Shown: positions 16,837-48,809 of the stretch, in pieces
Layout: each line of letters opens with the position of its first letter
How positions within the stretch are numbered: the stretch's first letter is position 1
DNA from: Takakia lepidozioides
Lineage: Eukaryota > Plantae > Bryophyta
Assembly: GCA_030704615.1 (NCBI GenBank)
Contig: CM060731.1
Coordinates: 9,672,001 to 9,736,000 of the forward strand
DNA length: 64,000 nucleotides
Reading direction: 5' to 3'
Notes under the pieces: model-generated
The model's input: only the letters and a program-made list of their open reading frames with translations
Databases searched by the model: none
Told to the model about the DNA's origin: nothing
Position numbers and translations under genes: made by a program

Positions 16837-17583
16837 TCATTGCCTGATCACGAACAATGGAGCGTTGACAGAGACGGGCATGCCATCCATCGCCAGTATG
16901 TCTACGACGGTGCCATCGGCATCAGCTTCAATCTCCGTCATCAGCTTCAATGTGTCAACCACGCAGAGTACTTGTCCCTTTCGCACTCGGTCTCCAACTC
17001 TTACATAGAGTGCTTCGAAAGGTGCGGGCGACCGGAAAAAGTTACCTTCCAAAGGACACAAAACCAAGGGGAAATCCACAGCTGGTCTGCCAGAAAAGGT
17101 CTCAAGCATGCTGCCCTGTGTTTGATCAGCTTCGCAACTTCTTTGCCACTCCAAGTCCTCGTTATCTGAATGCCCAGAATTGACGAGGTTGGCAAACTCT
17201 GACATCAAGCTCACCAGCTCACCCTGCCTACTGTTTGTGGCAGCGCCGTTCACTTCAGACAAGTCCGACAATTTTCTGTTCAGATCATCAAAGGGGAGAG
17301 GCAAGGTGTTTCCACATGCACAAGCCCAAACAGCCAACTTCAACACCTGCCCCTCTGCTGAAACTGAGAGAGAAAGGGAGCCATTCTTGCCACTCTTTAC
17401 TGGCACCACGAACTGAGAACCGCTAGGGCAGTGACCAGCCTTGAATCCATTCTTCAACAAGTGGATCGCACACCCACAGTTTTTATGGTACGGGTGCTTG
17501 GAGGTGGACGACGAAGCGCAAGCTCCAGTCATCAGTCTGGAGGACACGAACGGACTAACTGCCATGTAGCTGCTAGCTTCCAT
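16837..17583 (-). CDS. Chimeric protein: plant PYHKNCGC Cys/His module fused to BCCP-like biotinyl domain (copy 1, DTLKL)
   Basis: Intact single-exon 248-aa ORF. C-terminal ~75 aa CPLEGNFFRSPAP.EA.YVRVGDRVRKGQVLCVVDTLKLMTEIEAD..GTVVDILAMDGMPVSVNAPLFVI align to plant BCCP (SPMAGTFYRSPAPGEP.FVKVGD.V.KGQV.CIIEAMKLMNEIEAD.SGT..EI...DG..VS.D.PLF.I). N-terminal HPYHKNCGCAIH. Confidence 0.85.
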   Translation of the reverse strand: MEASSYMAVSPFVSSRLMTGACASSSTSKHPYHKNCGCAIHLLKNGFKAGHCPSGSQFVVPVKSGKNGSLSLSVSAEGQVLKLAVWACACGNTLPLPFDDLNRKLSDLSEVNGAATNSRQGELVSLMSEFANLVNSGHSDNEDLEWQRSCEADQTQGSMLETFSGRPAVDFPLVLCPLEGNFFRSPAPFEALYVRVGDRVRKGQVLCVVDTLKLMTEIEADADGTVVDILAMDGMPVSVNAPLFVIRQ

Positions 17584-18439
17584 GGCTTCTCTCTAACCCT
17601 GATCAATCCCACACTCCTCCAAGCGCTCAAACTGCACAACCTCACTTCAGCGAACTTCTCTCGACTCTCTTGGCTTTCCCGGTGCTCTAAGTAAGCTCCG
17701 GTATCTTGTGGGTTCTCTTGCTGTATCTTGCCCTCCGAGATCATTTTCTGTGTTTGCGACATGAGATTATGGGCTGTGAGCTGCAGAGGAGTTGAAGATC
17801 TACGGGGTGAGGGGGCATTAAAAGCAAGGCGAGGGAGGAGCAGGGCCAACGGGGCACATAGAGAGGCCCGCCTGGAGCATTAAAAGCAGGCGAGGTAACA
17901 GGCAGATTCCGAGAGTAAGTTAGTCATTTTGACGGTAGCCTACGCCATATTACCGTGCTTCAACTCAGACAAGGAACTCTCACGGCCCTAGAAATCTTGA
18001 CAATTTTGTCCTTTCGTGTGGGTTAGCAATATGCATGTTCGTCGTTTTCGTTACTTCAAACTACTTATTCGAAGAGAACTATGAATACCGACGGTCCCTG
18101 GACAACCACTTAGGCATTTTTGCGCCTAATAATAAATTCAATCAATCAGCAAATTAGGCACGTTTTGAAAACCATTTCTCACATTAGGCATCTGCATGCA
18201 TAATTTTTTAGAATTAGGAACATGAGAAGAGAAAACATTTATTTTCTTAAGAATAAAATTACGAAATAGACACCCAGTGCCATCATTTGGGTGGGCCCTT
18301 CCAGGCTCCAGCTACCTTTCATTTCCTTTGAAACCCTAATATGATGACATTGTGGAGTCCATGTAATGGCCTTTCGAAGTTACATGAAGCTCTCGCAAAT
18401 AGATTGCGATTTGTAGGAAGTTATTCCCGCACGCATATA

Positions 18440-20548
18440 TCAATATATGAAGCGAGACGTTTGTTTTGTTTGTTTTGTTTTGTTTTGTTTTGTCACGTTG
18501 AGATGTCCCAAACCGCGAGGCCCCGGCGCTCATGCTTGGTAACGTTGGAAAGGCCTCGACGAGGAGGGGTGCACGGGCTTGGTCTCATGATTTTTGGACA
18601 TGTGGTGTGGGAGATGTGGAATTCCAAGTACTTTTGTTCGCTGAAAATTCACAAGAAAATAGCAAAAATGGCAAAGTGGGCATTCCTGGACAATGGTTGG
18701 AGCCTCGTCGGGAGAGATATCAAGGGAAAGGTCTCCGGTTCAAATCTGGTCGTAGGCTCTGTGGGAAAAAAATGCATTTGGACTTAGATGACATTGGACC
18801 CTTGGGCCAACGGCAAAGGCTACGCTAGAGGTCGCACTTGGGTCTCGACATAGGAGACGCACTTGCATACATAGGAGATTGCACTTGGGCTTAGATGACA
18901 CTTGACACTTGGGCCAACGGCACAGGCTACCCTAGAGGTCGCATTTGGGCCTCGCGTAGGAAATGCATTGGATACATAGGAAATTGCACTTTGTCTTAGA
19001 TTTTCAATTCTTCACACATGGGCCAAATGTACAGGCTATCTTAGAGGTCGTTTGGGCCTCGACATAGGAGACGCACTGGGATACATAGAAGATCTTACAC
19101 TTGGATTTAGATGACACTTGACAGTTGGGACCACGACACATGTTACGCTAGAGGTCGCATTTGGGCCTCGACACTTGGATACAGAGACGATTGCACTTGA
19201 ACTTAGATGACATTGGACACTTGGGCCAACGGCAAAGGCTACTAGAGGTTGCATTTGGGCCTCGACATAGGAGACGCACTTTGATACATAGGGGATTGCA
19301 CTTGGGCTTAGATGACACTGGACACTTGGGCCAATGGCACATACTACCCTAGAGGTCGCATTTGGGCCTCGACATAGGAGACCCACTTGGATACATATGG
19401 GATTGCACTTGGGCTTAGATGACATTGGACACTGGAGGTCGCACTTGGGCCTCTACATGGGAGAAGTACTTGGATACATAGGACATTGCAATTGGGTGTT
19501 AGGGGGCTGTCTGGGACTTAGACAGTTTTACGGGTTCTGTGGGGTACCCTTAATTTTGCGCAGATCTACGGGTAGTAAACTCTGATAGATACAGGCCTTA
19601 AGGGTGGCAGACAGGCTCACACAGTCAATAGTCACAGCCTAACACAGCGTGATACAGCGTGATACAACGTGACACAGTCAGACACAGCCTGACACAACCT
19701 AACACAGCGTGACAGGGCCTTAAGGGTGGCAGACAGACTCACACAGTTAACAGTCACAGTCTGTCACAGCTTGACACAGCGTGACACAACCTAACATAGC
19801 GTGATACAGCGTGACACAGTTAGTCACAGCCCGACACAACCTGTCACAGCCAGACACAACCTAACACAGTGTGACACAGTCAGTCACTAGAAGAGGTAGA
19901 GTAGCGACATGGAAGGAATCACTTCTTGGACATCACTTACGGAGGATCGCTTCTAGCATCACGGCGGATAGCACGATCTTGGAACACAGGGATGAAGATT
20001 ACACAGAGGAGGAGATACGACGAGATGATGCTTGATACTCACATGATGTAGAGAGATATGAGTGAAGTTGTGGACTGAATGCTTGAGTAGATGGAACATG
20101 GTAGATTGCAGAAGCAATCTGATACTTAATCATAGACAGTAAGGTAACTTGCTAACGTGAATGCGAGAAGGAATACAAATAGGAAAACACCCCCATGATA
20201 CATTAGTTGTAGGTCATGACTGATTGTTCTGAGCGGGAGAAGTACTTAGAGATATCCAACTCTTCTATCTTGGATTTCCACCTCAGATAGCGAAGGGATG
20301 GGTGAGTAAAAGCTGCTCGACATAGGGCTTAGATTTCAATTCTTCACACATGGGTCTCAACATAGGAGACACACTTGGATACATAAGGATTGCACTTGCA
20401 CAAGTGCTGGATACTTGGGCCAACGGCACAGACCACCCTGGTGGTCACACTTGGGCCTAGACATAGGAGACATATTTGAATGCATAAGAGATTGCACTCG
20501 GGCTTAGATGACCTTGGACACTTGGGCCAACGACACAAGCTACCCTAG
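18440..20548 (+). mobile_element. Non-autonomous Helitron with internal ~100-bp tandem repeats
   Basis: A|TCAATATATGAAGCGAGACG start and GGGCCAACGACACAAGCTACCCTAG|T end (5' TC, 3' CTAG, A/T insertion, no TSD). Same family at 58419-60804. Confidence 0.75.
19497..20322 (+). mobile_element. Solo LTR (same family as the gypsy LTR at 6475)
   Basis: TG..CA ends; 5-bp TSD TTGGG/TAGGG within a Helitron repeat unit; first ~75 bp match 6475 onward; internal (GTGACACA)-like microrepeats. Confidence 0.88.
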
Positions 20549-20759
20549 TTTGTATTGATTTTTATTCAATATTACAAACAATATGAGAAGCCATGAAAAG
20601 AGGTTTGCAAGTTTTTTGCTGGAATATTTGGGCATTAGGCACTTTGGCCCCATAGTTTCCGAACAATTAGGCCAAAATCTGAAAAATTCATAGAATTGGT
20701 TAGGCACTTTCATTTTGAATTAATTATTGCCTAAACGGTTGTCCAGGGACGGTATACCT

Positions 20760-21050
20760 CTACTGACGCAAGACCCCCTTCCTCCGGCCTCAGACTTTGT
20801 CTCCTCTTTTAGGACTCGTCAATCTCCTCTCTTGTACAAAGACTTTAACGTTTGTTGTACTCCATTTTTCACTCTTTCTTTCTTTTTTCATTTTTTTGAT
20901 CAATTCCCCGCCAAAGGTAAGGTGGTCTTATTGAGTGACTTCAATGCCCCGGTGGGCATTTTGGTGAGGATGAGCTGAATTCTATGGTAGACGGTTAATA
21001 AACTGTCCGGAAGAACTTCAGTTTTTGACCTTGAATAATAGGTCAAAAGG
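20760..21050 (+). pseudogene. LINE AP-endonuclease fragment (also tandemly duplicated at 31320-31930)
   Basis: KGKVVLLSDFNA.VG motif (cf. GDFNA of LINE endonucleases), followed by IG.F.EDELN in the unit B copies. Confidence 0.55.
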
Positions 21051-21509
21051 AAACCAAGTGCAGTGGACTCGTGAGAAAGCCGGAACACAAGAAGACTAGA
21101 ACTCTGGTTCAAGTAAGGATTTTTGTCTCAATCGATATACTTTCATATCTCTCTTTCCCTTTGGAGTTCTATGCTGTAACTTCGTCATTTTTTGGGGTGA
21201 TTTTATATGGATCACAGTGAATCTGTACAGTAGAGATTATAGCAAGCCAACATCGCTGCATCGTGTAGGGAATGTTGACTAGACCTAACTTCCTGCTGTC
21301 ATGTCGAGTTCAGGTTGTCCTAGGGTTGTTTGTATGAAAAAACTAAAGAAAAATTTAAATGTCTTGTTAGTAGCAGAGACAGCCTAGGCTTTTTGGGGGG
21401 AGACGGAGGTAGTTCCATATAATGCAAAATTATACTTTACTCTAGTTAATCATGGATATGGAATGGAACAACATTGAATTGTTGGAAATTCTCGGTGTTG
21501 GTCTTAGGA

Positions 21510-24500
21510 GGGATGAAGATTCGCCATCTTCTAGATCCCATGCATATTGAGAAGAATGTCTGCTCGGCCATCTATGGGCCGAACAAAATGGTGTGGACCC
21601 AAAGGGTGGGTGGAAGTATAGGCGCGCACCTTGGCAATGGACAAAGGATGAATACAATAAAGTGATAGCCACCATAAGTGTTGTCCGAACACCAACTGGT
21701 TATGGGTCATCCCTTCGTACACAGTTGAACGAAGAAGACGTGATCCATGGTTTGAAGTCTCATGACTACCACAATCTATTGCAAGACATCTTGTCCATTG
21801 CAGTACGTGGGACATTGACTCCCGAGGTTCGTGAGACAATCTATAGATTGGGAGGCTTGTTCCGGTGGATTTGCTCCAAAGAGTTGGAGGAAGCGGATTT
21901 TTCACGCATGAAGAAGAGGCGGCGGAGGTAATGTGTATGTTGAAGATGCACCTTCCTCCCTCCTTCTTTGACATCCAAGTGCACTTGGTAGTGCACTTAG
22001 TGGAAGAGGCTTCGATTGCCGGCCCCGTTCATTCTCGGTGGATGTACTTCCTTGAGCGTTATATGAAGACTTTGAGGATTTGTAAGACAAATGGCGCACC
22101 CGAAGGGTAGCATGGCGGAGGGGTATATGTTGCAAGAAGCTATGTTCTATTGCATGGAGTCATGGCAAGGGTGGATGAGGAAGCCCCTCGGATGTGGAAG
22201 GAAAAGGAGGATGCACGAACCCAAGGCAGCGTTTTGCCCAAAAAATCAAATAGGGTAAAATTGCCGACCTTGGTGATTGAGCAAGCGCATGACTTCATAC
22301 TGAAAAACACCCCATCCATACATGAGTGGGAAGCAAGATACAATAACCTTGTTCAGCAACGAGAGGATGAGCAGAACCATCCAAGGCCGGTTACTAGACG
22401 CCCACGACGAGGAGCGGGCCGCCGGAATGTTCCTTCATAGAATTTGCCCATGGAATTGCAGCCTCTAAGTTCATTCCAACAGTGGCTTCGGACTTCAGTT
22501 TATGACGTCGTTGCTCAAGGAGAGGTGGTTTCAGATTTGGTGCAAGACATTGCAAGGGGCCCCTCTCAATTCGCGACCTCATACATGGCGGTTTGGGTTC
22601 ACGGTCGTCATTTCCGCACTCGTGCTCTTGACATGAAGCGCAAAAAAACCTTTGATTTTGGCTTGTGTGCCACATATTGGCAAGACTCCGTGTGAGGCAA
22701 GGGAGATACACGACCTGCTATGAACAAACTTGAGTACATTGGAGAGCTTGAGAGCATACTCCAATTTCAGTATACAAGGTACCAGCCTCTTCTTTTCAAG
22801 GGAAGGTGGTTCCGGCCACATCTTGTAGGGCCTTCTGCAACACTAGTGCAAGATGATTGTGGTTTCATGCGCGTCAATGCAAATAGGCTCAACCCTACTC
22901 ATCGTCCCTCCGATGAGTTTTTTTCACGGCCTTTAGACATGGAGCAAGTTTTCTTCTCTGATGACAAAACAAGAGGGGGGAATTAGAAGGTGGTTGTGCA
23001 TGCTCAACCAAAAGGAAGACGTATCTATCATGGTCTCGGATCTCCATGGGGTGAGGCAATTGCGGTGGATAGAGAGACTGGTCATAATGATACTGATGAT
23101 GGAGGTTGGGTAGAGGGGGTAGAAGAGGATGATGACACCCCAGATAATGCATCCCGGACCCTATATGATGAAGCTCCAGAAATTACGGATGTTGGAGAAG
23201 TAGATGAAGACACGACCATTGACAACGAGGTGGAGGATGATTCGGAGGTGTCACGGACATAGCCCAGAGGAACTTACCATACTTATCAAATTACCGGAAG
23301 TTTACCAAATTACCAAGAGTAACTTGGGAAACTGCTCAGGAAGCTTCCTTTGGAGGAAACTTCTCCATCAAGATACTTCATTTGTTTAAGGAAGCTTCTC
23401 CATCAAGAAACCTTTGTTTAATCTTGGAAACTTCTCCAGCAAGAAACCTCCATAGGGGAAGCTTTTTAGGGAAGGTTCTTAGTAGCCAGTATATATAGGA
23501 GGCGAGATTGGACATTCTTCAGTCTTGCCAACACAAGTTCAAGCTACTCTTGTTTCCAGTTCCAGTACTCAAGTCCAGCTTCCAGTACTCTAGTCCAGTT
23601 TCCAGTATCTAGTATTCCAGTCTAGTTTCCAGCATTCCAGTCTAGTTTCCAGCATTCCAGTATCCAAGTCAAGTTCCAGTATCCTGTACTGTTGTTCATT
23701 GTTATAAAGATCGTCTTCATTCCTATTTACTCATCGTGCATACGGCCACGCCGACCTTGACTTCTTGTCTAGTCTTGTACCTCTAGTCTGATCTCTTGTT
23801 TGTGTTCAGTCATGTTCTTGTCCTTGACAGCAGGTGCCTTTTGAGGGCCGAACCATTTATGACGATGACTCCGATGACCAAGACGACTTGCAGCTTGATG
23901 AGGATGAAGAAGCTCCGATGATGATGTTCAAGTTGATTAGACACGAAATCAAAGCTACATAATAATTCTCGCACCGAATTGTACTCATCCCTTCGATTGA
24001 TTGTACATGTACATATATATTGTAGCTTATTACTATGATTGATCAAATATGGCTGTGGCTGGTAGTCTTTTAAGAAAGAAGGCAGATGCATTGAATATGT
24101 TGGAGCAACACATACATATGTGGTATAAAGAGAATTATCAAAATGAGTGTCACAATCTACAAGAAGGTCCACAACAACAAGCTAAACCATAAAGAAAAAT
24201 AAACACCCTACCCCAGTACCATATGGAAAAAAAAAAAAAAACTAAGAACCCCCAAAGGCCTTAAACCTAAACCTAGAAAACCCTGCCATCGCTGCCTGCG
24301 ACCCCCACACGTCGCAAACTGCGACGAGTTTTTAGGATATATGCGGCCGGGGGTTGCAGGATACGACCTGTTTTTTTTTTTTGAAAGAATTGGGCAGCCC
24401 CTGTTTGTGACGCCCGACCGTCGCCAATGCCTTTTGCCATTCATGCCACCATGCGACGGCCTGGCGTCGCCAACAAGGGCTGCGATGAAAGAAAGGACAA

Positions 24501-24752: not shown

Positions 24753-24869
24753 GGGGGGGGAAGCAGTGCAGAAAGATAAATATCCAATGCAGTGAGGGAT
24801 CTGGTACAACAATTCAGCCAGAGCTTGGAGAGAGAGATCCAATCATCAAAAAGTCTGAATCTACATACT

Positions 24870-26400: not shown

Positions 26401-29400
26401 AGCGAATGAGCCTATCTGTCGCTGGTGCGAGGCGTTGCAGCCAGAAGATGTTGTCTTACCAAACGGCTCCATGGACTGGAGAGATGAATCAGAGTTCGCG
26501 GCACCCACTTAGCGAGCAATGAGAGATAGACGATCGGACAAGTTGAGGATCGAGAAAAGAGGGAACAGTTTATCAAAACGACTCGACAAATAAGGGAAAC
26601 AAGGAGCTACATTTGATTGAATTAAACATCAATAACATACAATTAATACATTGTCAAGATTGTATCAAAGGATCGCAGGAGTGACACTATTAGTTTCAAC
26701 ACAACAAGATTGAAGCAAACGACAATGACAACAAGATCGAAGCAAAAGAGAATGATATAGGTTTGGACATGTAGAGGTCAATTGACTCGGAACAAAAAGA
26801 GGTTTGACATGACCAATAGGGGAGCAGGAAAAGAGTAGAGCGAGGACTAGAGCTGCATTGTTGCGGCCCTTTGCTTTGAGGGCAAAGGGTCGAGACACAA
26901 GAGGGGATGCCCCTGTGGTGGGGGCAGTGGCAGCGAATAGATATGGGGGACTGAAGCATCCTTGAGTGCCTTCGACACTCAAGGAGGCGGAGGCACTCAC
27001 TAGGTGGAGTGGGGGCTCCACGTGGGGTGGTGGTAGCGCAGGGAGTCGTAGTGGGGGTGACATAGGACTGACCATGAGGCTGAGGCTTTGTGGTGGGAGT
27101 CGTGGGGAGTCTTGGGACTCACCACGGTCCATTGGGACCGTGGTGAGTGGGCCAAGACTCACCGCGGCTCACCACTGGGACGATCGAGGGTCTAAGTGGT
27201 GGTGCACCAGATTTGGACTGGGCTACTTGTGGAACCCCCGCGGACACCTACAGAAGTATATATAGGGAGTAGTATCCCCGAGAACGGTGCAAGCCCGTTG
27301 GTGACCAAAAGCTAGTGAGTAAGCGTGCGAGCCGGAAAGCGACCAAGGTGTATTGGGGGAGCTATTCCGGACTACCAACTACCAAAGGGAATTTCCACTA
27401 GGTCCCAAGTGGTGGAGGGTCTCGTGGAGGAGTGAGGGGGACCGTTATGCCCCGGTGAGTAGCCGAAGCTCCGAGTTGGCCCGGCGGCTGGTTTGGGAGT
27501 TAGGCGCGCGCATCAAAGCGAGTAACTATAACTTAAAGGGGGAGTTACCAAAGTGAGGTGCGCGACATGCATGGACCACACAAACGAATAGTCAAGAAAT
27601 ATAGACTGGACAAATGGAAGAACAAGTAAAAGAGGGGACCGAACAAACATTGGAATGAGAAGCATAGACTGGAAAACATGGGAGTAAATAAGACATGACC
27701 AACAAATAGGGGAGCGAAGAAGGAGCGGAGCAATAAATCATGGAGTGGATAATAGTATGAAGGAGTGAGGAAAAACTAGTGGATCAAAGGATGAAGGGAC
27801 TGAATCACAAACAAAAGAAATTTACAAAGAGCAAGGAAAGAAGACCGAACATATATGAGAGTGAGGATGGAATGGAAAAATAAAAAAAACCAAACAACTG
27901 AGAAAGCGAGCTAAAAGATCGAACAAATAGGAGAGCAAGGAATTAAGGGATATATTTTTACAGGATCAGACAAACATAGGATTGAAAAATAAAATTGCAA
28001 GCTCTTTGCAGATGTTCTGAAGGAAAACGGACCAAGTTACTTCAAGATTTTCGATTCCTCGTGGGGCTGGAGAGACATCATATGTACTAGAAGCGGAGAT
28101 AAATGCAATTCCGACCCTGCGATCCCCGACACATGAAGGCCCCTCTAGCCCCTGGCCTTTGCCCCTGGAGGTTGAAAGTGATATCAATTGGAAGCACAAA
28201 AAGAACATGAACTCTAAGATTAAAGCGCAAGTGAACTTTGAGGCCCTTAGATCTAAGCTTTAGGCTCCTGTCTCTTTCTACGTTTTCTTCGGGTTTCAAA
28301 TCGACTCTGCTACTTTGCTCTGCAGGTTTGCCTTTTGCCGGTTTGGCATAGATGGTAGAATTTCATTCTCAGATTTATGCCCTGGTGGTAGTTTTGGAGG
28401 TCTAAATTTAACCATGACTGGTTGTTCTGCCTCATGGTCCCCCACGAGGTTATTTTTCCTCGTTCTGTAATTTGATTAACAAGGCTTCGATCCCTTTTAT
28501 GAAAATAAAATAAAATAAAATAAATTGTTGGAAGTAATTAATCATATCTAAGGCCAAAGGTCTAGAAGACTAAGAGACTACCATGTTTAACTCACCATTG
28601 GAAGGTGAATGGTCACCATAGTAGGAAGTGGAAGTGACCAAGTAGATCATAGAAGAGCTTCTCGTGTATGCTCGGGCCAAATGCTTGAAAATGAAGACCA
28701 CCTTGCACACAACCCACATGAAGTTTGGATATTCCTTGGGTCAAACGGTTGCAATGAAGTGTAGAAAGCCATGTGCTAAGGAATTTTGAAGTTCAAGGAG
28801 AAAACATGATAATGATCAAGGATGCTGTTGAAGAACGGTTTGGATGTGTGGGTGGCCTTGACAATGTTAACCAGGCACCCACACCACCACTCCAAAGGAT
28901 CCACCTGGACAGCTTTGTCGTGTCACCCCTAATTAGTAACAGGAATGGGGTCCAGAGGTCTCTTCGGTCAGCAGCACATTGACTAAGAGGTCCATTCAAG
29001 GTCAGGCACACATTTAGGTGTTTGCACCTTAGATAATTCCATGATTCTAGTTTCAAGTTCCTTGTCAAGTTCCGCAAAAACAGCAATGAAGCAGCACAAC
29101 CAACGTACCTGCAGATCTGTGTATATTTTGTACTTCCTCTTAGAAAGGTGAGACTTTGTCATAAGGGACCTTCATTATATGCCCTGGGAACCCCATGTTC
29201 CTGTGAAAACTCCGGATGCCGGTTTTATGCTGTGTAATGCTATGCACATCCTCGTTTCAGGTAGCACTCGGAAGGACAGTCAGAAGGACAGTCAGAAAAT
29301 GTAGACAAAGACACATTTTCACTTTCCGAAACGCACACTAGGATGTTTAGTTGCAAGCTGCACTCTCTTCAATCAATTCTGGCCGTGCATCATCTTTTGC

Positions 29401-30049
29401 CCCGAGCATGGAGAAGGCAGGATGAGCTCGATTTCCTTACCATCCCTAAAACAAAACAGGGGAAAAGAAAGGGTAAGAGGTTTCTGCAGAAAGAGGGTCA
29501 GAACAAATTGCTGACATAATCCATCTCACAGAACAAAACCATAGAGAAGGACTCCCCAAAGAGGAAAGGCCATCTGGCAGAGAGTATCTCTTTAAGAGAA
29601 GCACTTCGACTGCACATTCTTCAAAAACTTCGTGGATGTTGTGGAGAGAAGAGAAAGACCAACTCCTGACATCCACATTCTCTAAAAAGCAAAGCGATAT
29701 GGTCGACAAAGAGAGAGTACACGACAACTGCAAACTTGAGATGAGACCTTTGATAGATTTCATTGCACAGTTTGTGCACATGTGTGGAATCACAGCTTTC
29801 CTACTCCCCAACCTAGTTATCTCTTTCCCCAGAAAAAAATTGCTATCGGTATCCGGTATCTAATGAACCCTGAAGTTGAGTGTATGGGAAAATTGTCAAG
29901 AAGGGACATAGATACTAAGTTCTCCCCGCCAGATCGGCGCCTGTATGAGGGAGTTTCACAGAAAAATGCATCTGTCGTGTTGGGGTAACAATATTGTGCC
30001 TGATTAGGGCCTAGTCTACACAGCAGGGGTCGCCCTGTTTCTGAGTTGC

Positions 30050-30796
30050 TCATTGCCTGATCACGAACAATGGTGCGTTGACAGAGACGGGCATGCCATC
30101 CATCGCCAGTATGTCTACGACGGTGCCATCGGCATCAGCTTCAATCTCCGTCATCAGCTTCAATGTTTCAACCACGCACAGTACTTGCCCCTTTCGCACT
30201 CGGTCTCCAACTCTAACATAGGGTGCTTCGAGAGGTGCGGGCGACCGGAAAAAGTTACCTTCCAAAGGACACAAAACCAAGGGGAAATCCACAGCTGGTC
30301 TGCCAGATACGGTCTCAAGCATGCTGCCCTGTGTTTGATCAGCTTCGCAACTTCTTTGCCACTCCAAGTCCTCGTTATCTGAATGCACAGAATCGACAAG
30401 GTTCGCAAACTCTGACAGCAAGCTCACCAGCTCACCCTGCCTACTGTTTGTGGCAGCGCCGTTCACTTCAGACAAGTCCGACAATTTTCTGTTCAGATCA
30501 TCAAATGGCAGAGGCAAGGTGTTTCCACATGCACAAGCCCAAACAGCCAACTTTGACACCTGCCTCTCTGCTGAAACTGAGAGAGAAAGGGAGCCATTCT
30601 TGCCACTCTTTACTGGCACCACGAACTGAGAACCGCTAGGGCAGTGACCAGCCTTGAATCCATTCTTCAACAGGTGGATCGCACACCCACAGTTTTTATG
30701 GTACGGGTGCTTGGAGGTGGACGACGAAGCGCAAGCTCCAGTCATCAGTCTGGAGGACACGAACGGACTAACTGCCATGTAGCTGCTAGCTTCCAT
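30050..30796 (-). CDS. Chimeric PYHKNCGC-module/BCCP-like protein (copy 2, ETLKL)
   Basis: Intact 248-aa ORF with 9 amino-acid differences from copy 1. Confidence 0.85.
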   Translation of the reverse strand: MEASSYMAVSPFVSSRLMTGACASSSTSKHPYHKNCGCAIHLLKNGFKAGHCPSGSQFVVPVKSGKNGSLSLSVSAERQVSKLAVWACACGNTLPLPFDDLNRKLSDLSEVNGAATNSRQGELVSLLSEFANLVDSVHSDNEDLEWQRSCEADQTQGSMLETVSGRPAVDFPLVLCPLEGNFFRSPAPLEAPYVRVGDRVRKGQVLCVVETLKLMTEIEADADGTVVDILAMDGMPVSVNAPLFVIRQ

Positions 30797-31319
30797 GGCT
30801 TCTCTCTAACCCTGATCAATCCCACACTCCTCCAAGCGCTCAAACTGCACAACCTCACTTCAGCGAACTTCTCTCGACTCTCTTGGCTTTCCCGGTGCTC
30901 TAAGTAAGCTCCGGTATCTTGTGGGTTCTCTTGCTGTATCTTGCCCTCCGAGATCATTTTCTGTGTTTGCGACATGAGAGTGTGGGCTGTGAGCTGCAGA
31001 GGAGTTGAAGATCTAAGGGGGGAGGGGGCATTAAAAGCAAGGCGAGGGAGGAGCAGGGCCAACGGGGCACATAGAGAGGCCCGCCTGGAGCATTAAAAGC
31101 AGGCGAGGTAACAGGCAGATTCCGAGAGTAAGTTAACGAGAGAGTTATAGTCATTTTGACGGTAGCCTACGCCATATTACCGTGCTTCAACTCAGACAAG
31201 GAACTCTTTGTCTTCAGCCTCGGTTGCATTCATCCGTGCCCTAGCAATCTTGACAATTTGTGGTTAGCAATATATTTGTCTTGTTAGTTCAAACTAAGCG
31301 AGGGAACTATGAATACACC

Positions 31320-31930
31320 TCTACGGACACCTCTACGGACGTCGCAAGACCCCTTCCCTCCGGCCTCAAAGTGTGTCCTCTTTTAGGACTTGTCAATCTC
31401 CTCTCTTGTACAAAGACTTAAACTTAGAGTTTGATGTGCTCCATCTTTCTTTCTCTCTCTCTGCTAAGTTCCTCGCCAAAGGTCAGGTGGTCTTATTGAG
31501 TGACTTCAATGCCTGGGTGGGCAAAGGTCTCACCATCGGACCTTTTGATGAGGATGAGCTGAATTCTATGGTAGACAATTAATAAACTGTCTTGAAGATC
31601 TTCAGCTTTTGACCTTGAATATTCACCTCTATAGACGTCGCAAGACCCCTTCCCTCCAGCCTCATACTGTCTCCTCTTTTAGGACTTGTCAATCTCCTCT
31701 CTTGTACAAAGACTTAAACTTAGAGTTTGTTGTGCTCCATTTTTCTTTCTCTCTCTCTGCTAAGTTCCTCGCCAAAGGTCAGGTGGTCTTATTGAGTGAC
31801 TTCAATGCCTGGGTGGGGCAAAGGTCTCCATTAGGATGATACCATCGGGCTTTGTGATGAGGACGAGCTGAATTCTATGGTAGACGGTTAATAAACTGTC
31901 TGGAAGAACTTCAGCTTTTGACCTTGAATA
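31320..31930. repeat. ~305-bp tandem duplication specific to unit B
   Basis: CACCTCTA..GACGTCGCAAGACCCCTTCCCTCC...CTTCAGCTTTTGACCTTGAATA occurs twice here and once in unit A. Confidence 0.9.
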
Positions 31931-34004: not shown

Positions 34005-34041
<37 letters not shown>

Positions 34042-40471: not shown

Positions 40472-40678
40472 CTAACATGCAAAGTCATACATGTTGACAA
40501 GGGTGTTGAATAGAAAAACATTTGGCGTGAATCCACTTTGGATAATGTGAGTGTGCGCCTGCTTTCCAGCTTCCAGACCTTCCATCTTGATGCACTCAAG
40601 CAAGAGACAGACATGTATCTGAATCTGCTGAAATGCCTCTGTGGAAGCCTTCTTTTCATCTGCCTGACCACATTTCAC
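40472..40678 (-). pseudogene. PLS-class PPR fragment inside the CACTA
   Basis: EAFQQ..HVCLLLECIKMEGLEAGKQAHTHIIQSGFTPNVFLFNTLVNMY resembles the L/S motif consensus (LL.AC.....LE.GKQ.H..II..GF..DVF..N.LV.MY). Confidence 0.8.
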
Positions 40679-42539: not shown

Positions 42540-44430
42540 CTCGTCTCTGTTACCTGTTTGTGGATACTTTCCTGTTGTCACAGTGGCAGTACCATGTGAA
42601 AGTCACTCCAAACTATCAAAGAATTCAACATGAAAATTTAGGGCCGATTCTGATAAGAGGGAAAAACAGGGTGAATTGTGTTGAAGAAGGTGCCTTGATT
42701 ACCAGAGCCTGGTTTTATCAATTGTGCCGCTGCTACCAGTTGACCATCTACCCCCATGCAGGTTTCTTGTACCTATCCTTCCACATCGAATCATAGGTAA
42801 TCTGGAGCTTCAGATCTGGCCCTCTTGGATGAATCTGGACCCACACTCTATCCCTGCTCCTCCAGGTCGGAAAAGCGTTCATTCCAAAGCTTCTCTTCAT
42901 CTCTGTTATCTGTTTTTGGGTACTTTCCTGCTGCCATATCGGCAATAACTTGTGAAAGTCACTTCAAACCACCACAGATCCACCCAACGAGCTAACTTAC
43001 AGAATTTAATATGCAAATCCAGGGCTGAGCAGAATGAGAGGGAAAAACAAGCTGAAATAGGTCGAAGAAGAAGGTATCTTTACCACATTGTCCTCGTCCT
43101 TGTGTCATGACCCATGGAGGATTTGACTGATCATGAACCCAAGAGGACCTCTTGTGTGTGCTGCTTGTGTCTGTAATCAGGTAATGTCGGATTGGTCCGT
43201 GAGAACCACCACTGTGCAACTGAGCGGGCAGAGATTGAAACACGACAAGGGTGAGATGTGTTGAAGAAGCAATGCCTTGTTCTACCAATTGTGTTGCTGC
43301 CCTTGCTGTTTCCAGTTGACCATCCACCCACGCAGATACTTTCCTGCTGCCACATCAGCAGAGACTTGTCAAAGTCACCCCAAACCACCAGAGATCCATC
43401 CAACGAGCTAACTTCCAGAATTCAATATGCATGTCAGGGCCAAGTCTGTCCAAAGCTTCTCCTCATCTCTGTTATCTGTTTTTCGACACTTTCCTGCAGT
43501 CACATCGGCATTAACTTGTCAAAGTCACTCTAAACGGCCACCACACATCCACCCCAACGAGCTCACTTACAGAATTCAATATGCATCTCGGGGCCAAGTC
43601 TGATGAGAGGGAAAACAAGCTGAAGAACTCCAGCCATGAACCTGTTACATGTCAAAATCACTCGAAAACCACCAGAGATCCATCAAGGAGCTAACTTGCA
43701 GAATTCAACATGGAAAATTGAGGGACGACTCTGATGACAGAGAAAAACAGGCTGAAATGTGTTGAAGAAGGTGCCTTCATTAGCAGTGCTAGTTGATACT
43801 GCACTAGCAGTGCCACTGCCAGTTGACCATCTGTTTCTTGTAGCTAACCTCCACAGGGAAGAGCTTGAAATCCGGGAATCTTGGATGAATCTGGAACCAC
43901 AATCTATCCCTGCACTCCTTCAGCTATCCATGCCTGTGTACAAATCGTGAATACATCCTCAGCCTTGCTGCAGCTAGCAGCTGAAGCAGCTGACACTGAC
44001 GCCCTAACCCTACCTACAGCAACATGTCAAAATCACTCCAAAACCACCATCGATGCACCAACGAGCTTCTCCTCATCTATGTTATCTGTTTTTGGATACC
44101 TTTACCTTCCTGCTGCCACATCGGCAGTAGCTTGTCAAAGTCACTCCTAACCACCACAGATCCACCCAACCAGCTAACTTACAGAATGAAATATGCATCT
44201 CGGGGCCGAGTCTGATGAGAGGGTAAAACAGGCAGAAATAGGTTGAAGAAGAAGGTGCCCTCATCACATTGTCCTCGACCTTGTGTCTTGACCAATGGAG
44301 GATTGGACTGACCATGAAACCGAGAGGACCTCTTGTGTGTGCTGTTTGTGTCTATAGTCAGGTAATGTCGGATCGGTCTGTGAGAGCGGCCACGGTGCAT
44401 TCGAGCAGGTAGAGATTGAAACACGGCGTG
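42540..44430. repeat. Complex internal repeat array within the CACTA
   Basis: About 6 degenerate copies of GTCAAAGTCACTC.AAACCACCA.AGATCCA.CCAACGAGCTAACTTACAGAATTCAA.ATG, and two copies of a ~200-bp block (43050-43245, 44225-44425). Confidence 0.8.
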
Positions 44431-45970
44431 CTATCGCGATGCTTTGGCACTAGGAAGACGCAGCCGCAAAAATCACCAAGTCCCCTGCACTCTCTCTGCG
44501 ACCTAGCAACCCTAAATTCGAGCCAATCTTTTGAATTTTTTGAACGTTTTGCACCCTAACAATATATAAAATGATTATATATTCCATGTCATTATATAAA
44601 GGTATTTTTAACTTTATATATTTGTATATATATATTCATAGTCATTAAATGAGTCACAGTTAAATCGACTGTATATTTTATTTAATTACTAATATATATC
44701 TCAAATAATATGAATTGAAAATATAATTGTGGAGTTGCTAGTGAAGTTATTGAAACCACTTACAATTTAAAATAAATCACCTATAAGTTGACATCACCCG
44801 AAGTCGTATCATTTGCAATCGTTAGATGCACTTGCATCCAATACACCACAATATTTCAACCACGCGAGCAATGATATGTAGACACGTTGTCATTTGCAGT
44901 CACATCCTCGTTCTATTTCATCCATTTATCTTTGCATTTTCCACATAGACATTCCTTGGGCAACCAACGATCGCCACGTGCAGTAGTGAATACTAGGACG
45001 TGGAAAACAAATGAGCTGTCATTGTGAAACTTGTTCAGGTGCCGGATCCGCAAGTCTTGACCCTGCTGGATAAATCTTACTAGCAGGCATACTTTGCAAT
45101 GTCCATGTCATCATAGTGTAGTTTTGTCCATGACTCGTAGTCGTATCTACCATCTCAATCTATCTGGTCAAATGTGTTTGACCACAGATCCTGACGTGGC
45201 GGAGGCACACAGTGGCATATACGTCTTCTGGTGGTCACAATTGGCATCCAGGACTGCCCCCTTGCATTTTGTAGACAAATATGCTACGACTGGGCAAATG
45301 TGGCAGACGTTAAAGCCAGGATCTGTTGTAGTGTCAATATGTGAAGCAGTTGCCTTCACAGCGAGAAACCACACCTAAATGTTGAATGCATATGTTGTAC
45401 CCATCCTTGAAACTACTAACTACTGCTATGCTCAAAAGTTTTATCCACTACTACACAATACACTAGAATTGTCATGGCTGCCACTAAAGGCCACACACTT
45501 ACACCACCACTACAAAAGCAACCTACTTTGCTCAATAGGTGCCTTGTGGTCAGAGATGTTGTGTGGAATTCCCTGCAGGACTTAGCTGCAATCAAAGGAG
45601 GACTACCAAAACCTCTAATCAGCAGCTAAAATGCTTCTTGAGAGAAACTGACTTGGAGCTCATTCAAGCTGAGCTGAAGGAGAAACTAGGAGAAACTAGG
45701 GAACTTGTAATAATCATGGCTATGCCCTTAAGTTGCACCATCTTTTTTTTCTACCATTTTCCCAAAGTGCTCAACCAGTTTTCCAAAATGGGAAACCATG
45801 GCGCTTTGATTGCTAGAAGCTACATGTTGTGCTTCAAATGCCAACCTTGTTGTGCTTCTTGCCGGTTGAGTTGTTGAATGGGCTAGGGGAAGAATTGGTG
45901 TACTTCTTCCGCCCTGGCATGGGAGGTCGACCCCGAGGAGGAACAGGTGGCTCATCTTGGCTTTCTGAGG

Positions 45971-46534
45971 CTAGACTTGCTGAACCCAAATTGTTGCTAC
46001 TAAAGGGCCAGCATTGACATCATCAATTGGGTTGATATCTACATGCTGCTGATTTGGTACCAGTGGTACCCTCATGCTTGATGAGGTCACCTTTGGAGCA
46101 TTGCAAGCTCGCTCTGATAGAAAAGACATGTCCTCAAAAAGATCCTTTCCACGTTCTTCAGTGGTCATAGTGAAGTAGTCTTCATTACTTATGCTATGAA
46201 GCTGGTGGCCCTGAATATCCTTGAAATGCTTACAGAGGTTCTGCCACTTGTTGCTGCAACTTGTTGCATGCCTTCCAAGCACACCCTGTCTCTCCAATGA
46301 CAACACAATCCTCTCCCACTTGACTTTATCGCAATTCATGTTGCCGCGTGCATTAGAACCCTTCCACTCCTCCCATTCCTGCCGCTTAGTGGTAGCTAGG
46401 ATGCGCACTTCTGTCTCACTCCAATTTCTATCTCTAGCTCTTTTTCTAGGAGTCTTGGAGCTTTGCAATTCAACCTCACCAGCCCTAAAGCCATCACCAC
46501 TGCCTGTGGTGCCTGTGGTGTCTGTGGAAGACAT
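45971..46534 (-). CDS. Harbinger Myb/SANT-like (trihelix) DNA-binding protein, probably frameshifted at the C-terminus
   Basis: RNWSETEVRIL...K.....KWERIVLSL...G..R.ATSCSNKWQNL.K.FK.I three-tryptophan pattern, located inside Harbinger TIRs. Confidence 0.75.
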   Translation of the reverse strand: MSSTDTTGTTGSGDGFRAGEVELQSSKTPRKRARDRNWSETEVRILATTKRQEWEEWKGSNARGNMNCDKVKWERIVLSLERQGVLGRHATSCSNKWQNLCKHFKDIQGHQLHSISNEDYFTMTTEERGKDLFEDMSFLSERACNAPKVTSSSMRVPLVPNQQHVDINPIDDVNAGPLVATIWVQQV

Positions 46535-48059
46535 GCTACACTCTCTCCTACACTCTCCCTTGCAATCTCTGGATTAAAAAATTGAGACACACACTGCCTG
46601 CAAAAGCCTCTCCCCTCTGCACTCTACGCCATCACGAGCGCATGCCCTGCAAGAACCATTCCACTCTCCCCTCTGCACTCTATGCCATCGCGAGCCCCTG
46701 CCCTGCAAGAACCTCTCTACTCTCCCCGCCATCGCGAGCGTATGGCACCTGCAAAACCTCTCGGCCGCTGCCTGATTTTTAATTGTTGACCGAGATTTAA
46801 CACCTCCATGGAGGAGGTGTTAAATCTCGCCCTCTCCCCGTTACAACGTTTAGCAGCTGTTAATCGGCCGGTTATCTAACCGGCTTTTTAATTGGCGTGT
46901 GCGGCCGTCTCCCTACCGCTAACGTCAATTACCTAACTTGATTGACGTACTAATTGGCAGTGCGGCCGGGGCCTTAGAAAGGTGAGACTGTGTAATAAGG
47001 GACCTTTATTATATGCCCTGGGAACTCCATGTTCCTGTGAAAACTCCGGATGCCTTTTTCACTTTCCGAAACGCACACTAGGATGTTTAGTTGCAAGCTG
47101 CATTCTCTTCAACCAATTCTGGCCGTGCATCAGCTTTTGCCCCAAGCAGGGAGAAGGCAGGATGAGCTCTAAGAAAGAAGAAGGGACAACAGTGTCACGT
47201 ACTCCTCGTATTTTGCAGGTGAAAATTAAAGGTACTTTACTTATGTATGTCCATCCTCCAGTGAGCCCTTCTAATGCTATTGTCTCCACTTTGCTCTCAC
47301 CCGTCCCTCCTCATGCCCCCAATGACCTTTCCGTCTCAATCATATGCGGTGCTTGATCTATACAATGGCTAGGACAAAGTTGCAAGCATTGATCTCCTTA
47401 CCATCCCTAAAACAAAACAGGGGAAAAGAAAGGGTAAGAGGTTTCTGCAAACAGAGGGTCAAAACAAATTGCTGACAGAATCCATCTCACAGAACAAAAC
47501 CATACGGGGAAGGACTCCCCAAAGAGGAAAGGCCTTCTGGTAGAGAGTATCTCTATAAGAGAAGCACTTCGACTGCACATTCTTCAAAAACTTCGTGGAT
47601 GTTGTGGAGAGAAGAGAAAGACCAACTCCTGACATCCACATTCTCTAAAAAGCAAAGCAAAATGGTCGACAAAGAGAGAGTACACGACAACTGCAAACTT
47701 GAGATGAATGGGGGGACCTTGATATATTTCATTTGCACAGTTTATGCACATGTGTGGAATCACAGCTTTCCTATTCCTCAATCTAGTTATCTCATTGCAG
47801 AGAAAAAAATTGCTATCGGTGATCCGGTATCTAATGAGCCCTGAAGTTGAGTGAGTGTATGGGAAAATTCTCAAGAAGGGACATCGATACTAAGTTCTCC
47901 CCGCCAGATCGGCGCCTGTATGAGGGAGTTCTGTCGTGTTGGGGTAACAATGTTTTGCCTGATTACTCTATACGGCAGGGGTCGCCCTGTTGGGGTAACA
48001 ATATTGTGCCTGATTAGGGCCTACTCTACACAGCAGGGTTCGCCCTGTTTCTGAGTTGC

Positions 48060-48809
48060 TCATTGCCTGATCACGAACAATGGTGCGTTGACAGAGACGG
48101 GCATGCCATCCATCGCCAGTATGTCTACGACGGTGCCATCGGCATCAGCTTCAATCTCCGTCATCAGCTTCAATGTGTCAACCACGCAGAGTACTTGCCC
48201 CTTTCGCACTCGGTCTCCAACTCTAACATAGGGTGCTTCGAGAGGTGCGGGCGACCGGAAAAAATTACCTTCCAACGGACACAAAACCAAGGGAAAATCC
48301 ACAGCTGGTCTGCCAGAAACGGTCTCAAGCATGCTGCCCCGTGTTTGATCAGCTTCACAACTTCTTTGCCACTCCAAGTCCTCGTTATCTGAATGCACAG
48401 AATCGACAAGGTTCGCAAACTCTGACATCAAGCTCACCAGCTCACCCTGCCTACTGTTTGTGGCAGCGCCGTTCACTTCAGACAAGTCCGACAATTTTCT
48501 GTTCAGATCATCAAATGGCACAGGCAAGGTGTTTCCACATGCACAAGCCCAAACAGCCAACTTCGACACCTGCCTCGCTGCTGAAACTGAGAGAGAAAGG
48601 GAACCATTCTTGCCACTCTTTACCGGCACCACGAACGGAGAACCGCTAGGGCAGTGACCAGCCTTGAATCCATTCTTCAAGAGGTGGATCGCACAACCAC
48701 AGTTTTTATGGTACGGATGCTTGGAGTTGGACGACGAAGCGCAAGCTCCAGTCATCAGTCTGGAGGACACGAATGGACTTACACCTGCCATAAAGCTGCT
48801 AGCTTCCAT
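48060..48809 (-). CDS. Chimeric PYHKNCGC-module/BCCP-like protein (copy 3, DTLKL)
   Basis: Intact 249-aa ORF with one extra codon near the N-terminus; its 5' UTR is the most diverged of the three copies. Confidence 0.85.
   Translation of the reverse strand: MEASSFMAGVSPFVSSRLMTGACASSSNSKHPYHKNCGCAIHLLKNGFKAGHCPSGSPFVVPVKSGKNGSLSLSVSAARQVSKLAVWACACGNTLPVPFDDLNRKLSDLSEVNGAATNSRQGELVSLMSEFANLVDSVHSDNEDLEWQRSCEADQTRGSMLETVSGRPAVDFPLVLCPLEGNFFRSPAPLEAPYVRVGDRVRKGQVLCVVDTLKLMTEIEADADGTVVDILAMDGMPVSVNAPLFVIRQ

What the first reader, a model, noticed from the sequence alone, without database searches (positions are those of the whole stretch)
16837..48809. Triplicated chimeric gene: Cys/His 'PYHKNCGCAIH' module fused to an intronless BCCP
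Seen: three open, single-exon 248-249-aa ORFs. Residues ~1-75 carry HPYHKNCGCAIH...GHC...FVVPVK..SLSLS. Residues ~120-150 (ELVSLMSEFANLV..D.EDLE....CE) resemble the conserved mid-helix of plastid BCCP. The last ~75 aa are a BCCP biotinyl domain including the RSPAP 'thumb', and the Pro/Ala-rich linker is largely missing. Knowledge: RPYH(K/R)NCGCALH defines small, uncharacterised stand-alone plant proteins (At2g46490-like, recalled from memory), and plant BCCP genes normally have several introns. Inference: a BCCP retrocopy fused in frame behind a putative metal-binding protein gene, and the new gene was then amplified. All three ORFs remain open although their flanks carry many indels and insertions, which suggests selection. 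It could be a lineage-specific regulator linking a Cys/His sensor to acetyl-CoA carboxylase or biotin metabolism.
Basis: partly seen in the sequence, partly recalled or inferred. Interest (0 to 1): 0.88.

Follow-up and report, generated by a model that had tools for sequence, protein, structure and literature searches.

The report
Moss gene fusing ASR-like and BCCP parts
A moss genome carries three tandem, intact and apparently transcribed copies of a new gene that joins the conserved Cys/His core of a small ABA-linked repressor family (ASR1/ASR2 type) to the biotin-carrying domain of the fatty-acid enzyme subunit BCCP; the combination was seen in no other organism searched, and its function is unknown.

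Summary

- **ORFs:** three minus-strand ORFs of 248, 248 and 249 aa are 95-97% identical.
- **N-terminal part:** residues about 1-75 are homologous to the ASR1/ASR2 (At5g35110/At2g46490) family. The motif PYHKNCGCA(I/L)H sits at the same distance from Met1. Family HMM gives 35.8 bits with 0 of 3000 shuffles reaching it; hhalign gives E 1e-8.
- **C-terminal part:** residues 165-248 are a streptophyte BCCP biotinyl domain with thumb and lysine (Pfam E 1e-16; TM 0.94 and 61% identity to Arabidopsis BCCP1).
- **Departures from BCCP:** the Pro/Ala linker is gone, AMKLM has become TLKLM, and the domain sits on a very long branch.
- **Uniqueness:** no protein among 1.84 billion representatives shares the N-terminal half.
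- **Selection:** dN/dS between copies is 0.15-0.26 in both halves. The coding sequence has one in-frame indel, whereas the flanks have 16-19.
- **Expression:** contigs from three public runs, probably RNA, cover only a colinear stretch of about 1.4 kb and represent all three copies.

Not shown: a retrocopy origin (a liverwort canonical BCCP is also single-exon), localisation, biotinylation and function. My best guess is a non-catalytic, biotinylatable BCCP derivative tethered to an ASR-type module. The scan had no earlier follow-up of this locus.

The parts
30050..30796 (-). Copy 2 (c2): complete single-exon ORF of 248 aa plus stop
   Evidence: contigs colinear with the genome across the ORF, with no joints
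16837..17583 (-). Copy 1 (c1): complete ORF of 248 aa; most private amino-acid changes, including thumb P192L
   Evidence: a 3' UTR contig carrying c1's 6-nt deletion was seen in run X1
48060..48809 (-). Copy 3 (c3): complete ORF of 249 aa (one extra Gly codon); the best-represented copy in the run contigs
   Evidence: the 786-nt and 967-nt contigs match 21 of 21 c3-specific sites and c3's 16-nt deletion and 3-nt insertion
30572..30796 (-). c2 aa 1-75: ASR-like N-terminal module (same module in c1 at 17359-17583 and c3 at 48582-48809)
   Evidence: Family HMM 35.8 bits, E 4e-13, 0 of 3000 shuffles; hhalign Prob 95.7, E 9.8e-9, aa 27-74; alignment A5
30674..30706 (-). c2 codons 31-41, PYHKNCGCAIH Cys/His motif (c1 17461-17493; c3 48684-48716)
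   Evidence: three exact matches in the window, 0 expected; the same motif is invariant in the ASR family
30305..30571 (-). c2 aa 76-164: acidic, helical middle region. aa about 115-152 may be a remnant of the BCCP N-domain helix; the fusion junction lies somewhere in aa about 75-115
   Evidence: AF2 helices at 74-89, 98-109 and 118-137; weak colinear matches to the BCCP N-domain
30053..30304 (-). c2 aa 165-248: BCCP-type biotinyl domain with thumb (c1 16840-17091; c3 48063-48314)
   Evidence: PF00364 E 6.6e-17; hhalign against plant BCCPs E 1.6e-31; pLDDT above 95; 9a87 TM 0.94, 1bdo TM 0.96
30158..30160 (-). c2 codon 213: candidate biotinyl lysine in V(E/D)TLKLMTEIEA (canonical form is EAMKLMNEIEA)
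   Evidence: alignment A4: K213 invariant. Of the 111 top hits in which the motif scan found a match, every one aligned at the biotinyl lysine reads AMK or SMK, apart from one ETMK; none reads TLK
29763..31165 (-). Approximate extent of the c2 transcript: 5' UTR of at least 370 nt, the ORF, and a 3' UTR of about 290-370 nt. The strand is inferred from the ORF
   Evidence: contig pieces from runs X1-X3; none at 28700-29762 or 31166-31461
29075..31207 (-). Duplicated unit around c2 (c1 unit about 15369-17980; c3 unit about 47056-49075)
   Evidence: self-BLAST and alignment A2

Best explanation
This is a lineage-restricted chimeric protein-coding gene of a moss, present as three tandem paralogues.

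Shown here:
- The first ~75 codons, from the start codon, are the conserved core of an ASR-type small Ser-rich protein: the H-x2-C-x-C-x2-H motif PYHKNCGCA(I/L)H followed by a P-x-K...G-S-L-S-L box.
- The last ~84 codons are the thumb-bearing biotinyl domain of a streptophyte plastid-type BCCP, with the acceptor lysine kept.
- The gene is intact in all three copies. It is under purifying selection in both halves.
- It is very probably transcribed as an unspliced mRNA of about 1.4 kb.

Inferred:
- The BCCP-derived part probably begins near aa 115, or even at the mature N-terminus near aa 77. If so, the ASR-like module replaced the BCCP transit peptide.
- The fusion predates the triplication by a long time. 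The BCCP stem branch is about 1.1 substitutions per site, whereas dS among the copies is 0.06-0.12.

Proposed mechanism (inference):
- The domain still folds as a BCCP domain and is probably biotinylated by holocarboxylase synthetase.
- It has lost the flexible Pro/Ala linker and the KLVDSRD...IRKKEA N-domain signature, and the near-universal AMK has become TLK. It is therefore unlikely to shuttle carboxybiotin in acetyl-CoA carboxylase.
- It most likely acts as a non-catalytic BCCP derivative, comparable in logic to BADC proteins, that couples a biotin-bearing or BC/BADC-binding domain to whatever the ASR-type Cys/His module binds.
- The compartment is open. The make-up of the N-terminus resembles a plastid transit peptide, but ASR proteins are nuclear.
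For: ORFs and their identity. ASR homology: File S1 of PMC9959101; 43 stand-alone ASR-like loci fetched with the motif pattern; HMM 35.8 bits, 0 of 3000 shuffles, and p = 0.02 with the motif removed; hhalign E 9.8e-9; motif at aa 31 against 28-30 in the family. BCCP homology; the tree places the copies inside the streptophyte BCCP clade (SH-aLRT 91-94) on a 1.12 branch; structure. Uniqueness of the architecture: of 11,893 hits, none reaches E below 1e-30, and none of the 150 best listed extends into the first ~95 residues; word-based searches with the N-terminus were blank. Selection: omega 0.15-0.26 in aa 1-164 as well as aa 165-248; Fisher p = 0.007, 1.3e-5 and 1.7e-5, and one in-frame indel in 747 nt against 16-19 events in about 1.1-1.3 kb of flank. 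Transcription: contigs of three runs from three studies cover only 29763-31165, colinear with the genome, and all three copies can be told apart in them. Loss of BCCP features. Transit-peptide-like make-up: 1 acidic, 7 basic and 18 Ser/Thr in aa 1-75.
Against: The runs are only guessed to be RNA and are contigs, so strand, ends and expression level are not shown. No parent ASR-like gene or canonical BCCP of this moss could be examined, and no orthologue was found in another species, so the age and mode of the fusion are inferred. Homology of aa 76-164 to BCCP is only marginal (p 0.05-0.07). Selection is measured only among three young paralogues, and gene conversion could blur it. Copy 1 carries a Pro-to-Leu change in the thumb and may be drifting. 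Biotinylation, localisation and partners are untested. TLK in place of AMK might prevent function altogether.
Confidence: 0.6

Rival explanations
1. It is a plastid BCCP isoform. On this reading the ASR-derived N-terminus now serves simply as a chloroplast transit peptide, and the protein still works as a biotin carrier, or as a structural subunit, of heteromeric acetyl-CoA carboxylase.
For: aa 1-75 have 1 acidic, 7 basic and 18 Ser/Thr residues, like the first 60 aa of plant BCCPs and unlike ASR proteins, which have at least 4 acidic residues. The lysine and thumb are kept and the fold is excellent. Weak colinear matches run from the BCCP mature N-terminus onward.
Against: The 11-residue Cys/His motif is 10 of 11 identical to angiosperm ASRs although the BCCP domain itself diverged by about 40%. 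That implies constraint on the motif beyond targeting. The linker is lost, AMK has become TLK, and the N-domain signature has eroded. TIGR00531 scores 76.7 bits against a cut-off of 115.2.
Confidence: 0.2
2. It is not a functional gene. On this reading it is a young, segmentally duplicated chimeric pseudogene or transposon cargo whose ORFs are open only because the copies are recent, and the transcripts are noise.
For: The copies differ by only 3-4% and lie in TE-rich DNA. There is no orthologue elsewhere. The same genome is reported to hold chimeric retrocopies and Pack-type transposons (unchecked notes).
Against: Synonymous changes clearly exceed nonsynonymous ones per site (omega 0.15-0.26, p down to 1e-5), and indels are depleted about tenfold relative to the flanks. 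There are no terminal inverted repeats at the unit ends. The deep divergence of the BCCP part together with a preserved fold and lysine implies long survival as an ORF before the triplication.
Confidence: 0.1
3. It is not a chimera. On this reading the whole ORF is a diverged BCCP paralogue and the PYHKNCGCAIH match is a coincidence inside a variable presequence.
For: This was my own first reading. Pfam and two word-based protein searches found nothing for the N-terminus, and its make-up is transit-peptide-like.
Against: Profile matches to the ASR family are far beyond chance and extend past the motif. The distance from Met1 is the same. The BCCPs of Marchantia, Ginkgo, Psilotum, lycophytes and charophytes lack the motif.
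Confidence: 0.05

Closest known systems
Plastid BCCP (accB-type biotin carboxyl carrier protein of heteromeric acetyl-CoA carboxylase; Arabidopsis BCCP1/2, PDB 9a87; E. coli 1BDO)
   Same: The C-terminal 80 aa: 57-63% identity to plant BCCPs, the same fold (TM 0.94-0.96), the thumb, and the lysine at the hairpin. The copies nest in the streptophyte BCCP clade.
   Different: There is no Pro/Ala linker. The N-domain signature KLVDSRD...IRKKEA is barely recognisable. AMKLM is replaced by TLKLM. The score is below the TIGR00531 cut-off. The N-terminus comes from another family. The branch is very long.
ASR1/ASR2 family (At5g35110, At2g46490; ABA-induced serine-rich repressors, PMC9959101)
   Same: The motif PYH(K/R)NCxCA(L/I)H lies about 30 aa from Met1, followed by a Cys/His pair and a P-x-(K/R)...G-S-L-x-L box. 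The match is colinear over aa 25-82.
   Different: ASR proteins are stand-alone, 78-138 aa, with an acidic N-terminal box (GLFRxIYEGCIS..D..ERR) and a Ser-rich tail, and are nuclear. Here the pre-motif segment is Ser/Thr-rich and almost free of acidic residues, RR is KH, and a BCCP part replaces the tail.
BADC proteins (BADC1-3; non-biotinylated BCCP-like subunits or regulators of plant acetyl-CoA carboxylase)
   Same: These are BCCP-derived proteins that have departed from the canonical AMKL motif and probably do not carry carboxybiotin. They offer a functional analogy for a non-catalytic BCCP derivative (PMC11926652).
   Different: BADCs lack the lysine and share only 25-30% identity with BCCP. 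This protein keeps the lysine and 57-63% identity, so it is an independent and much younger derivative.
Chimeric new genes of plants formed by retroposition or exon capture
   Same: Two unrelated coding parts are joined in frame in an intronless gene, with later tandem amplification and purifying selection.
   Different: No poly(A) tract, target-site duplication or intron-bearing parent could be shown. A bryophyte canonical BCCP is itself single-exon, so a DNA-level fusion is equally possible.

Membership tests
BCCP (accB / TIGR00531) | Biotin_lipoyl fold at the C-terminus | tested here: met
   PF00364 E 6e-17; AF2 pLDDT above 95; 9a87 TM 0.94 and 1bdo TM 0.96
BCCP (accB / TIGR00531) | Thumb protrusion specific to acetyl-CoA carboxylase BCCPs | tested here: met
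   FFRSPAPLEAPYV aligns with FYRSPAPGEPPFV; the model aligns with 1bdo over 79 columns against its 80 residues; c1 carries P192L
BCCP (accB / TIGR00531) | Acceptor lysine within (A/V/S)MK(L/M) | tested here: not met
   The lysine is present and invariant, but the tetrapeptide is TLKL. No listed hit with a scanned motif reads TLK; those aligned at the lysine read AMK or SMK, with one ETMK
BCCP (accB / TIGR00531) | Flexible Pro/Ala-rich linker | tested here: not met
   A gap of about 60 columns against plant BCCPs in alignment A4
BCCP (accB / TIGR00531) | N-terminal domain (plant signature LVKLVDSRD..L.LKQ..CE..IRKKEA) | tested here: inconclusive
   hhalign E 0.05; 19 of 300 and 209 of 3000 shuffles reach the score; weak matches are consistently colinear
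BCCP (accB / TIGR00531) | Whole-protein score above the curated cut-off | tested here: not met
   76.7 bits against 115.2
ASR1/ASR2-type small Ser-rich proteins | (R)RPYH(K/R)NCxCALH motif about 28-30 aa from Met1 | tested here: met
   KHPYHKNCGCAIH at aa 29-41; P, Y, H, N, C, C, A and H are invariant in the joint alignment A5
ASR1/ASR2-type small Ser-rich proteins | Downstream box (V/I)S(Y/F)P.(R/K)..WSEG.L.L and overall profile match | tested here: met
   FVVPVK-SGKNGSLSL; HMM 35.8 bits; hhalign E 9.8e-9; p = 0.02 with the motif removed
ASR1/ASR2-type small Ser-rich proteins | Small stand-alone protein (about 80-140 aa) with an acidic N-terminal box | tested here: not met
   248 aa, fused to BCCP; the pre-motif segment has 1 acidic residue against 2-6 in the family
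ASR1/ASR2-type small Ser-rich proteins | Nuclear localisation and repressor activity | not testable with these tools
   Reported for Arabidopsis ASR1/2 in PMC9959101
BADC | BCCP-like domain without the biotinyl lysine, about 25-30% identity to BCCP | tested here: not met
   Lysine kept; 57-63% identity
Processed retrogene | Intronless copy of an intron-bearing parent, with poly(A) remnant and target-site duplication | tested here: inconclusive
   The gene is intronless. Angiosperm BCCP genes are reported to have 5-7 introns, and the lycophyte gene spans exceed their coding length, but the BCCP of M. paleacea is single-exon. No poly(A) tract was seen by eye in alignment A2; no dedicated search for a poly(A) remnant or target-site duplication was run.

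The most novel reading that the evidence does not exclude
The protein may be a biotin-status or acetyl-CoA-carboxylase-status sensor. On this reading an ASR-type Cys/His regulatory module, nuclear repressor-like in Arabidopsis, has its activity, partners or location gated by whether the attached BCCP domain is biotinylated or bound by biotin carboxylase/BADC. That would link lipid or biotin metabolism to ABA/stress-type gene regulation in a moss.
Probability: 0.1. Interest if true: 0.8.

Novelty: new variant of a known kind. Interest (0 to 1): 0.55.

Why it matters
- It is a clean example of new-gene birth by domain fusion in a bryophyte. Both parents can be recognised, both halves are constrained, there are three expressed paralogues, and no counterpart was found in a very large protein library.
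- It takes the ASR-type PYHxNCxCALH motif, which has no Pfam family and has so far been described only for angiosperms, back to mosses with 10 of 11 residues kept. That argues the motif is a functional, probably metal-binding, unit.
- It is an independent, lysine-retaining BCCP derivative alongside the BADC proteins. It could be used to ask what a biotinyl domain does outside the catalytic cycle of acetyl-CoA carboxylase.
- Mosses allow targeted knockouts, so the function can be tested directly.

Tried and rejected
1. I first read aa 1-75 as an ordinary BCCP transit peptide. Pfam, NCBIfam and two word-based searches with the N-terminus were blank. In a database of 5.8 billion sequences an 11-residue motif cannot reach E below 10, so those blanks were uninformative. 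File S1 of the ASR paper overturned this reading.
2. Bacterial origin of the BCCP part: rejected, because the tree places it inside the streptophyte clade. The two best-scoring library hits are bacterial TIR proteins that rank first only because each has two biotinyl domains.
3. BADC membership: rejected, because the lysine is kept and identity is high.
4. Pack-type transposon cargo: no terminal inverted repeats at the unit boundaries.
5. A fourth 248-aa ORF at 769-1515 is a Gypsy integrase; the equal length is a coincidence. tblastn found no further copies or fragments in the window.
6. Exact look-up of the c3 protein in public assemblies: not on record.
7. The Protein Atlas searches gave only weak leads.
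8. Literature searches for the motif string found nothing.
9. Significance tests for the mid-helix stayed marginal.
No spliced model was needed.
Full report
**1. The observation**

The window holds three minus-strand ORFs at 16837-17583 (c1, 248 aa), 30050-30796 (c2, 248 aa) and 48060-48809 (c3, 249 aa). They are 95-97% identical in protein. Self-BLAST and a three-way DNA alignment show that only about 2.2-2.5 kb around each ORF is shared: c1 about 15369-17980, c2 29075-31207, c3 47056-49075. The 10-16 kb spacers are unrelated and rich in transposon remains. Notes from other windows of this scan describe the genome as a moss; I did not check that.

**2. The C-terminal part is BCCP**

- Pfam Biotin_lipoyl matches aa 177-246 (E 6e-17 to 6e-16). 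The NCBIfam BCCP equivalog matches only aa 169-247, at 76.7 bits against a cut-off of 115.2.
- An exhaustive HMMER search of 1.84 billion representatives gave 11,893 hits. None has E below 1e-30. In nearly all of the 150 best listed, the best-scoring stretch starts at or after about aa 126, and none extends into the first ~95 residues. The best single-domain hits are plant BCCPs at 57-63% identity. These include Ginkgo, Marchantia paleacea, Psilotum, Diphasiastrum, Selaginella, Chara and Coleochaete.
- Profile comparison with 20 plant BCCPs aligns aa 165-247 (E 1.6e-31).
- A maximum-likelihood tree of the domain puts the three copies inside the streptophyte BCCP clade (SH-aLRT 91-94), among non-seed plants. 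Their stem branch is 1.12 substitutions per site, against 0.1-0.3 for typical plant BCCPs.
- AlphaFold models aa 170-248 at pLDDT above 95. The best structural match is the Arabidopsis BCCP1 C-terminal domain (9a87: TM 0.94, rmsd 1.0 Å, 61% identity), then E. coli BCCP (1bdo: TM 0.96).
- The thumb and the lysine are present. However, the tetrapeptide is TLKL where canonical BCCPs have AMKL. No listed hit in which my motif scan found a match reads TLK; those aligned at the lysine read AMK or SMK, with one ETMK.
- The Pro/Ala linker is missing, seen as a gap of about 60 columns in alignment A4.

**3. The middle part**

aa 76-164 is acidic and predicted helical (helices 74-89, 98-109, 118-137; pLDDT 50-76). 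One of these runs from aa 64 to 152, starting at the BCCP mature N-terminus. It is only marginal statistically: E 0.05, with 19 of 300 and 209 of 3000 shuffles reaching the score. I treat BCCP ancestry from about aa 115 as likely but not shown.

**4. The N-terminal part is ASR-like**

My first reading was a transit peptide, because Pfam and two word-based searches were blank. That paper's File S1 shows that ASR1, ASR2 and 17 angiosperm homologues share (R)RPYH(K/R)NCxCALH about 29 aa from Met1. This is followed by a Cys/His pair, a (V/I)S(Y/F)P.(R/K)R.WSEG.L.L box and a Ser-rich tail.

A degenerate DNA pattern for the motif found 43 metagenome loci. Nearly all are angiosperm-like, stand-alone, single-ORF genes whose family-type products are 78-138 aa. 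One locus (L007) is a chance match and two (L016, L032) are aberrant. None is fused to a biotinyl domain.

- An HMM of 27 of them scores the moss aa 1-100 at 35.8 bits (E 4e-13; 0 of 3000 shuffles reach it, best decoy 9.9), aligned over aa 25-82.
- With the motif columns removed, 60 of 3000 shuffles still reach the score (p = 0.02).
- hhalign of the three copies against 14 family members gives Prob 95.7 and E 9.8e-9 over aa 27-74.
- The family has no Pfam model.

The loci were retrieved with a pattern that includes the moss motif, so the motif match to them is partly by construction. The family itself and its motif are documented independently in the paper.

**5. A difference inside the ASR-like module**

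The moss aa 1-75 hold 1 acidic, 7 basic and 16-18 Ser/Thr residues. ASR proteins have at least 4 acidic residues there. The first 60 aa of plant BCCPs have 0-4 acidic and 8-21 Ser/Thr residues. The module therefore has a transit-peptide-like make-up, yet its Cys/His motif is 10 of 11 identical to that of angiosperms.

**6. Selection**

- Pairwise Nei-Gojobori omega is 0.15-0.26 overall: 0.17-0.28 for aa 1-164 and 0.08-0.24 for aa 165-248. dS is 0.06-0.12.
- Fisher tests give p = 0.007, 1.3e-5 and 1.7e-5. The pairs are not independent.
- Between c3 and the other two copies, the shared flanks carry 16-19 indel events in about 1.1-1.3 kb. The 747-nt coding sequence carries one event, 3 nt and in frame.
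- Private changes number 23 synonymous and 15 nonsynonymous. c1 has the most amino-acid changes, including P192L in the thumb.

**7. Transcription**

Three runs of the same organism, from three studies, hold part of the stretch. Laid on 28700-31700, their contigs cover only 29763-31165, colinear with the genome and without joints. Nothing covers the rest of the duplicated unit, although that part is equally three-copy. This pattern fits RNA and not DNA, but the tool only guesses RNA, and contigs give neither strand nor ends.

- The main contigs match c3 at 21 of 21 diagnostic sites and carry c3's 16-nt deletion and 3-nt insertion.
- Other contigs match c2 exactly.
- One contig carries c1's 6-nt deletion.

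**8. Origin**

- Angiosperm BCCP genes are reported to have 5-7 introns (PMC9578262). Two lycophyte genes span more DNA than their coding length, so they have introns too.
- The canonical-looking BCCP of Marchantia paleacea is a single exon (L044 1001-1900). Intronlessness therefore does not prove retroposition here.
- No terminal inverted repeats lie at the unit ends.
- No poly(A) tract was evident by eye in the 3' flank of alignment A2. I ran no dedicated search for a poly(A) remnant or target-site duplications.
- ASR-like genes are themselves single-ORF.
- The fusion may have arisen by insertion of a 5'-truncated BCCP cDNA into an ASR-like gene. Alternatives are template switching between two mRNAs and a DNA-level rearrangement. 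An unchecked note of this scan reports a chimeric retrocopy elsewhere in this genome.

**9. Verdict**

A real, new chimeric gene: ASR-like core plus BCCP biotinyl domain, tandemly triplicated, constrained and very probably expressed. It is not a canonical BCCP, since four defining features fail or are doubtful. It is not a BADC, and it is not an ordinary ASR protein.

Its function is unknown. My committed guess is a non-catalytic, biotinylatable BCCP derivative tethered to an ASR-type Cys/His module. Plastid and nuclear localisation are both open.

Noticed in passing
P0010 and P0011 (library hits): The two best-scoring library hits are bacterial-looking proteins of about 350 aa. Each has an N-terminal segment that looks by eye like a TIR domain, followed by two tandem BCCP-type biotinyl domains, each with thumb and AMK/SMK lysine. 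It is an unusual architecture that might belong to a defence or signalling system.
   Followed up: no
L044:1001-1900 (Marchantia paleacea, GCA_014180765.2): The canonical-looking plastid BCCP of this liverwort is encoded by a single uninterrupted ORF. The lycophyte BCCP genes (L045, L046) span more DNA than their coding length, and angiosperm BCCP genes are reported to have 5-7 introns.
   Followed up: partly
window 769-1515 (-): A 248-aa ORF, the same length as the finding's ORFs by coincidence, is a Gypsy-type integrase fragment (Integrase_H2C2 plus rve).
   Followed up: yes
window 45971-46534 (-): A 187-aa ORF with a Myb/SANT-like DNA-binding domain (PF13837) lies between copies 2 and 3. 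It may be a transposon-associated or trihelix-type gene.
   Followed up: partly
window 15369-15582: A second, 83-87% identical copy of a 215-bp piece of the gene's 3' UTR lies about 1 kb downstream of copy 1. It may be a relic of an older partial duplication of the unit.
   Followed up: no
window 18773-19500 and 58300-60800: Arrays of related repeats of roughly 105-110 bp (76-89% identity) sit upstream of copy 1 and near the window's end.
   Followed up: no
window 31462-31621: A short segment just upstream of copy 2 is covered at much higher depth (up to about 540) by contigs that run on into unlike sequence. This suggests an abundant or expressed repeat.
   Followed up: no
L026 (1823-3996) and L043 (4562-6677): Poplar-like metagenome contigs carry two ASR-like genes in tandem about 1.8 kb apart, so the family also expands by local duplication in angiosperms.
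   Followed up: no
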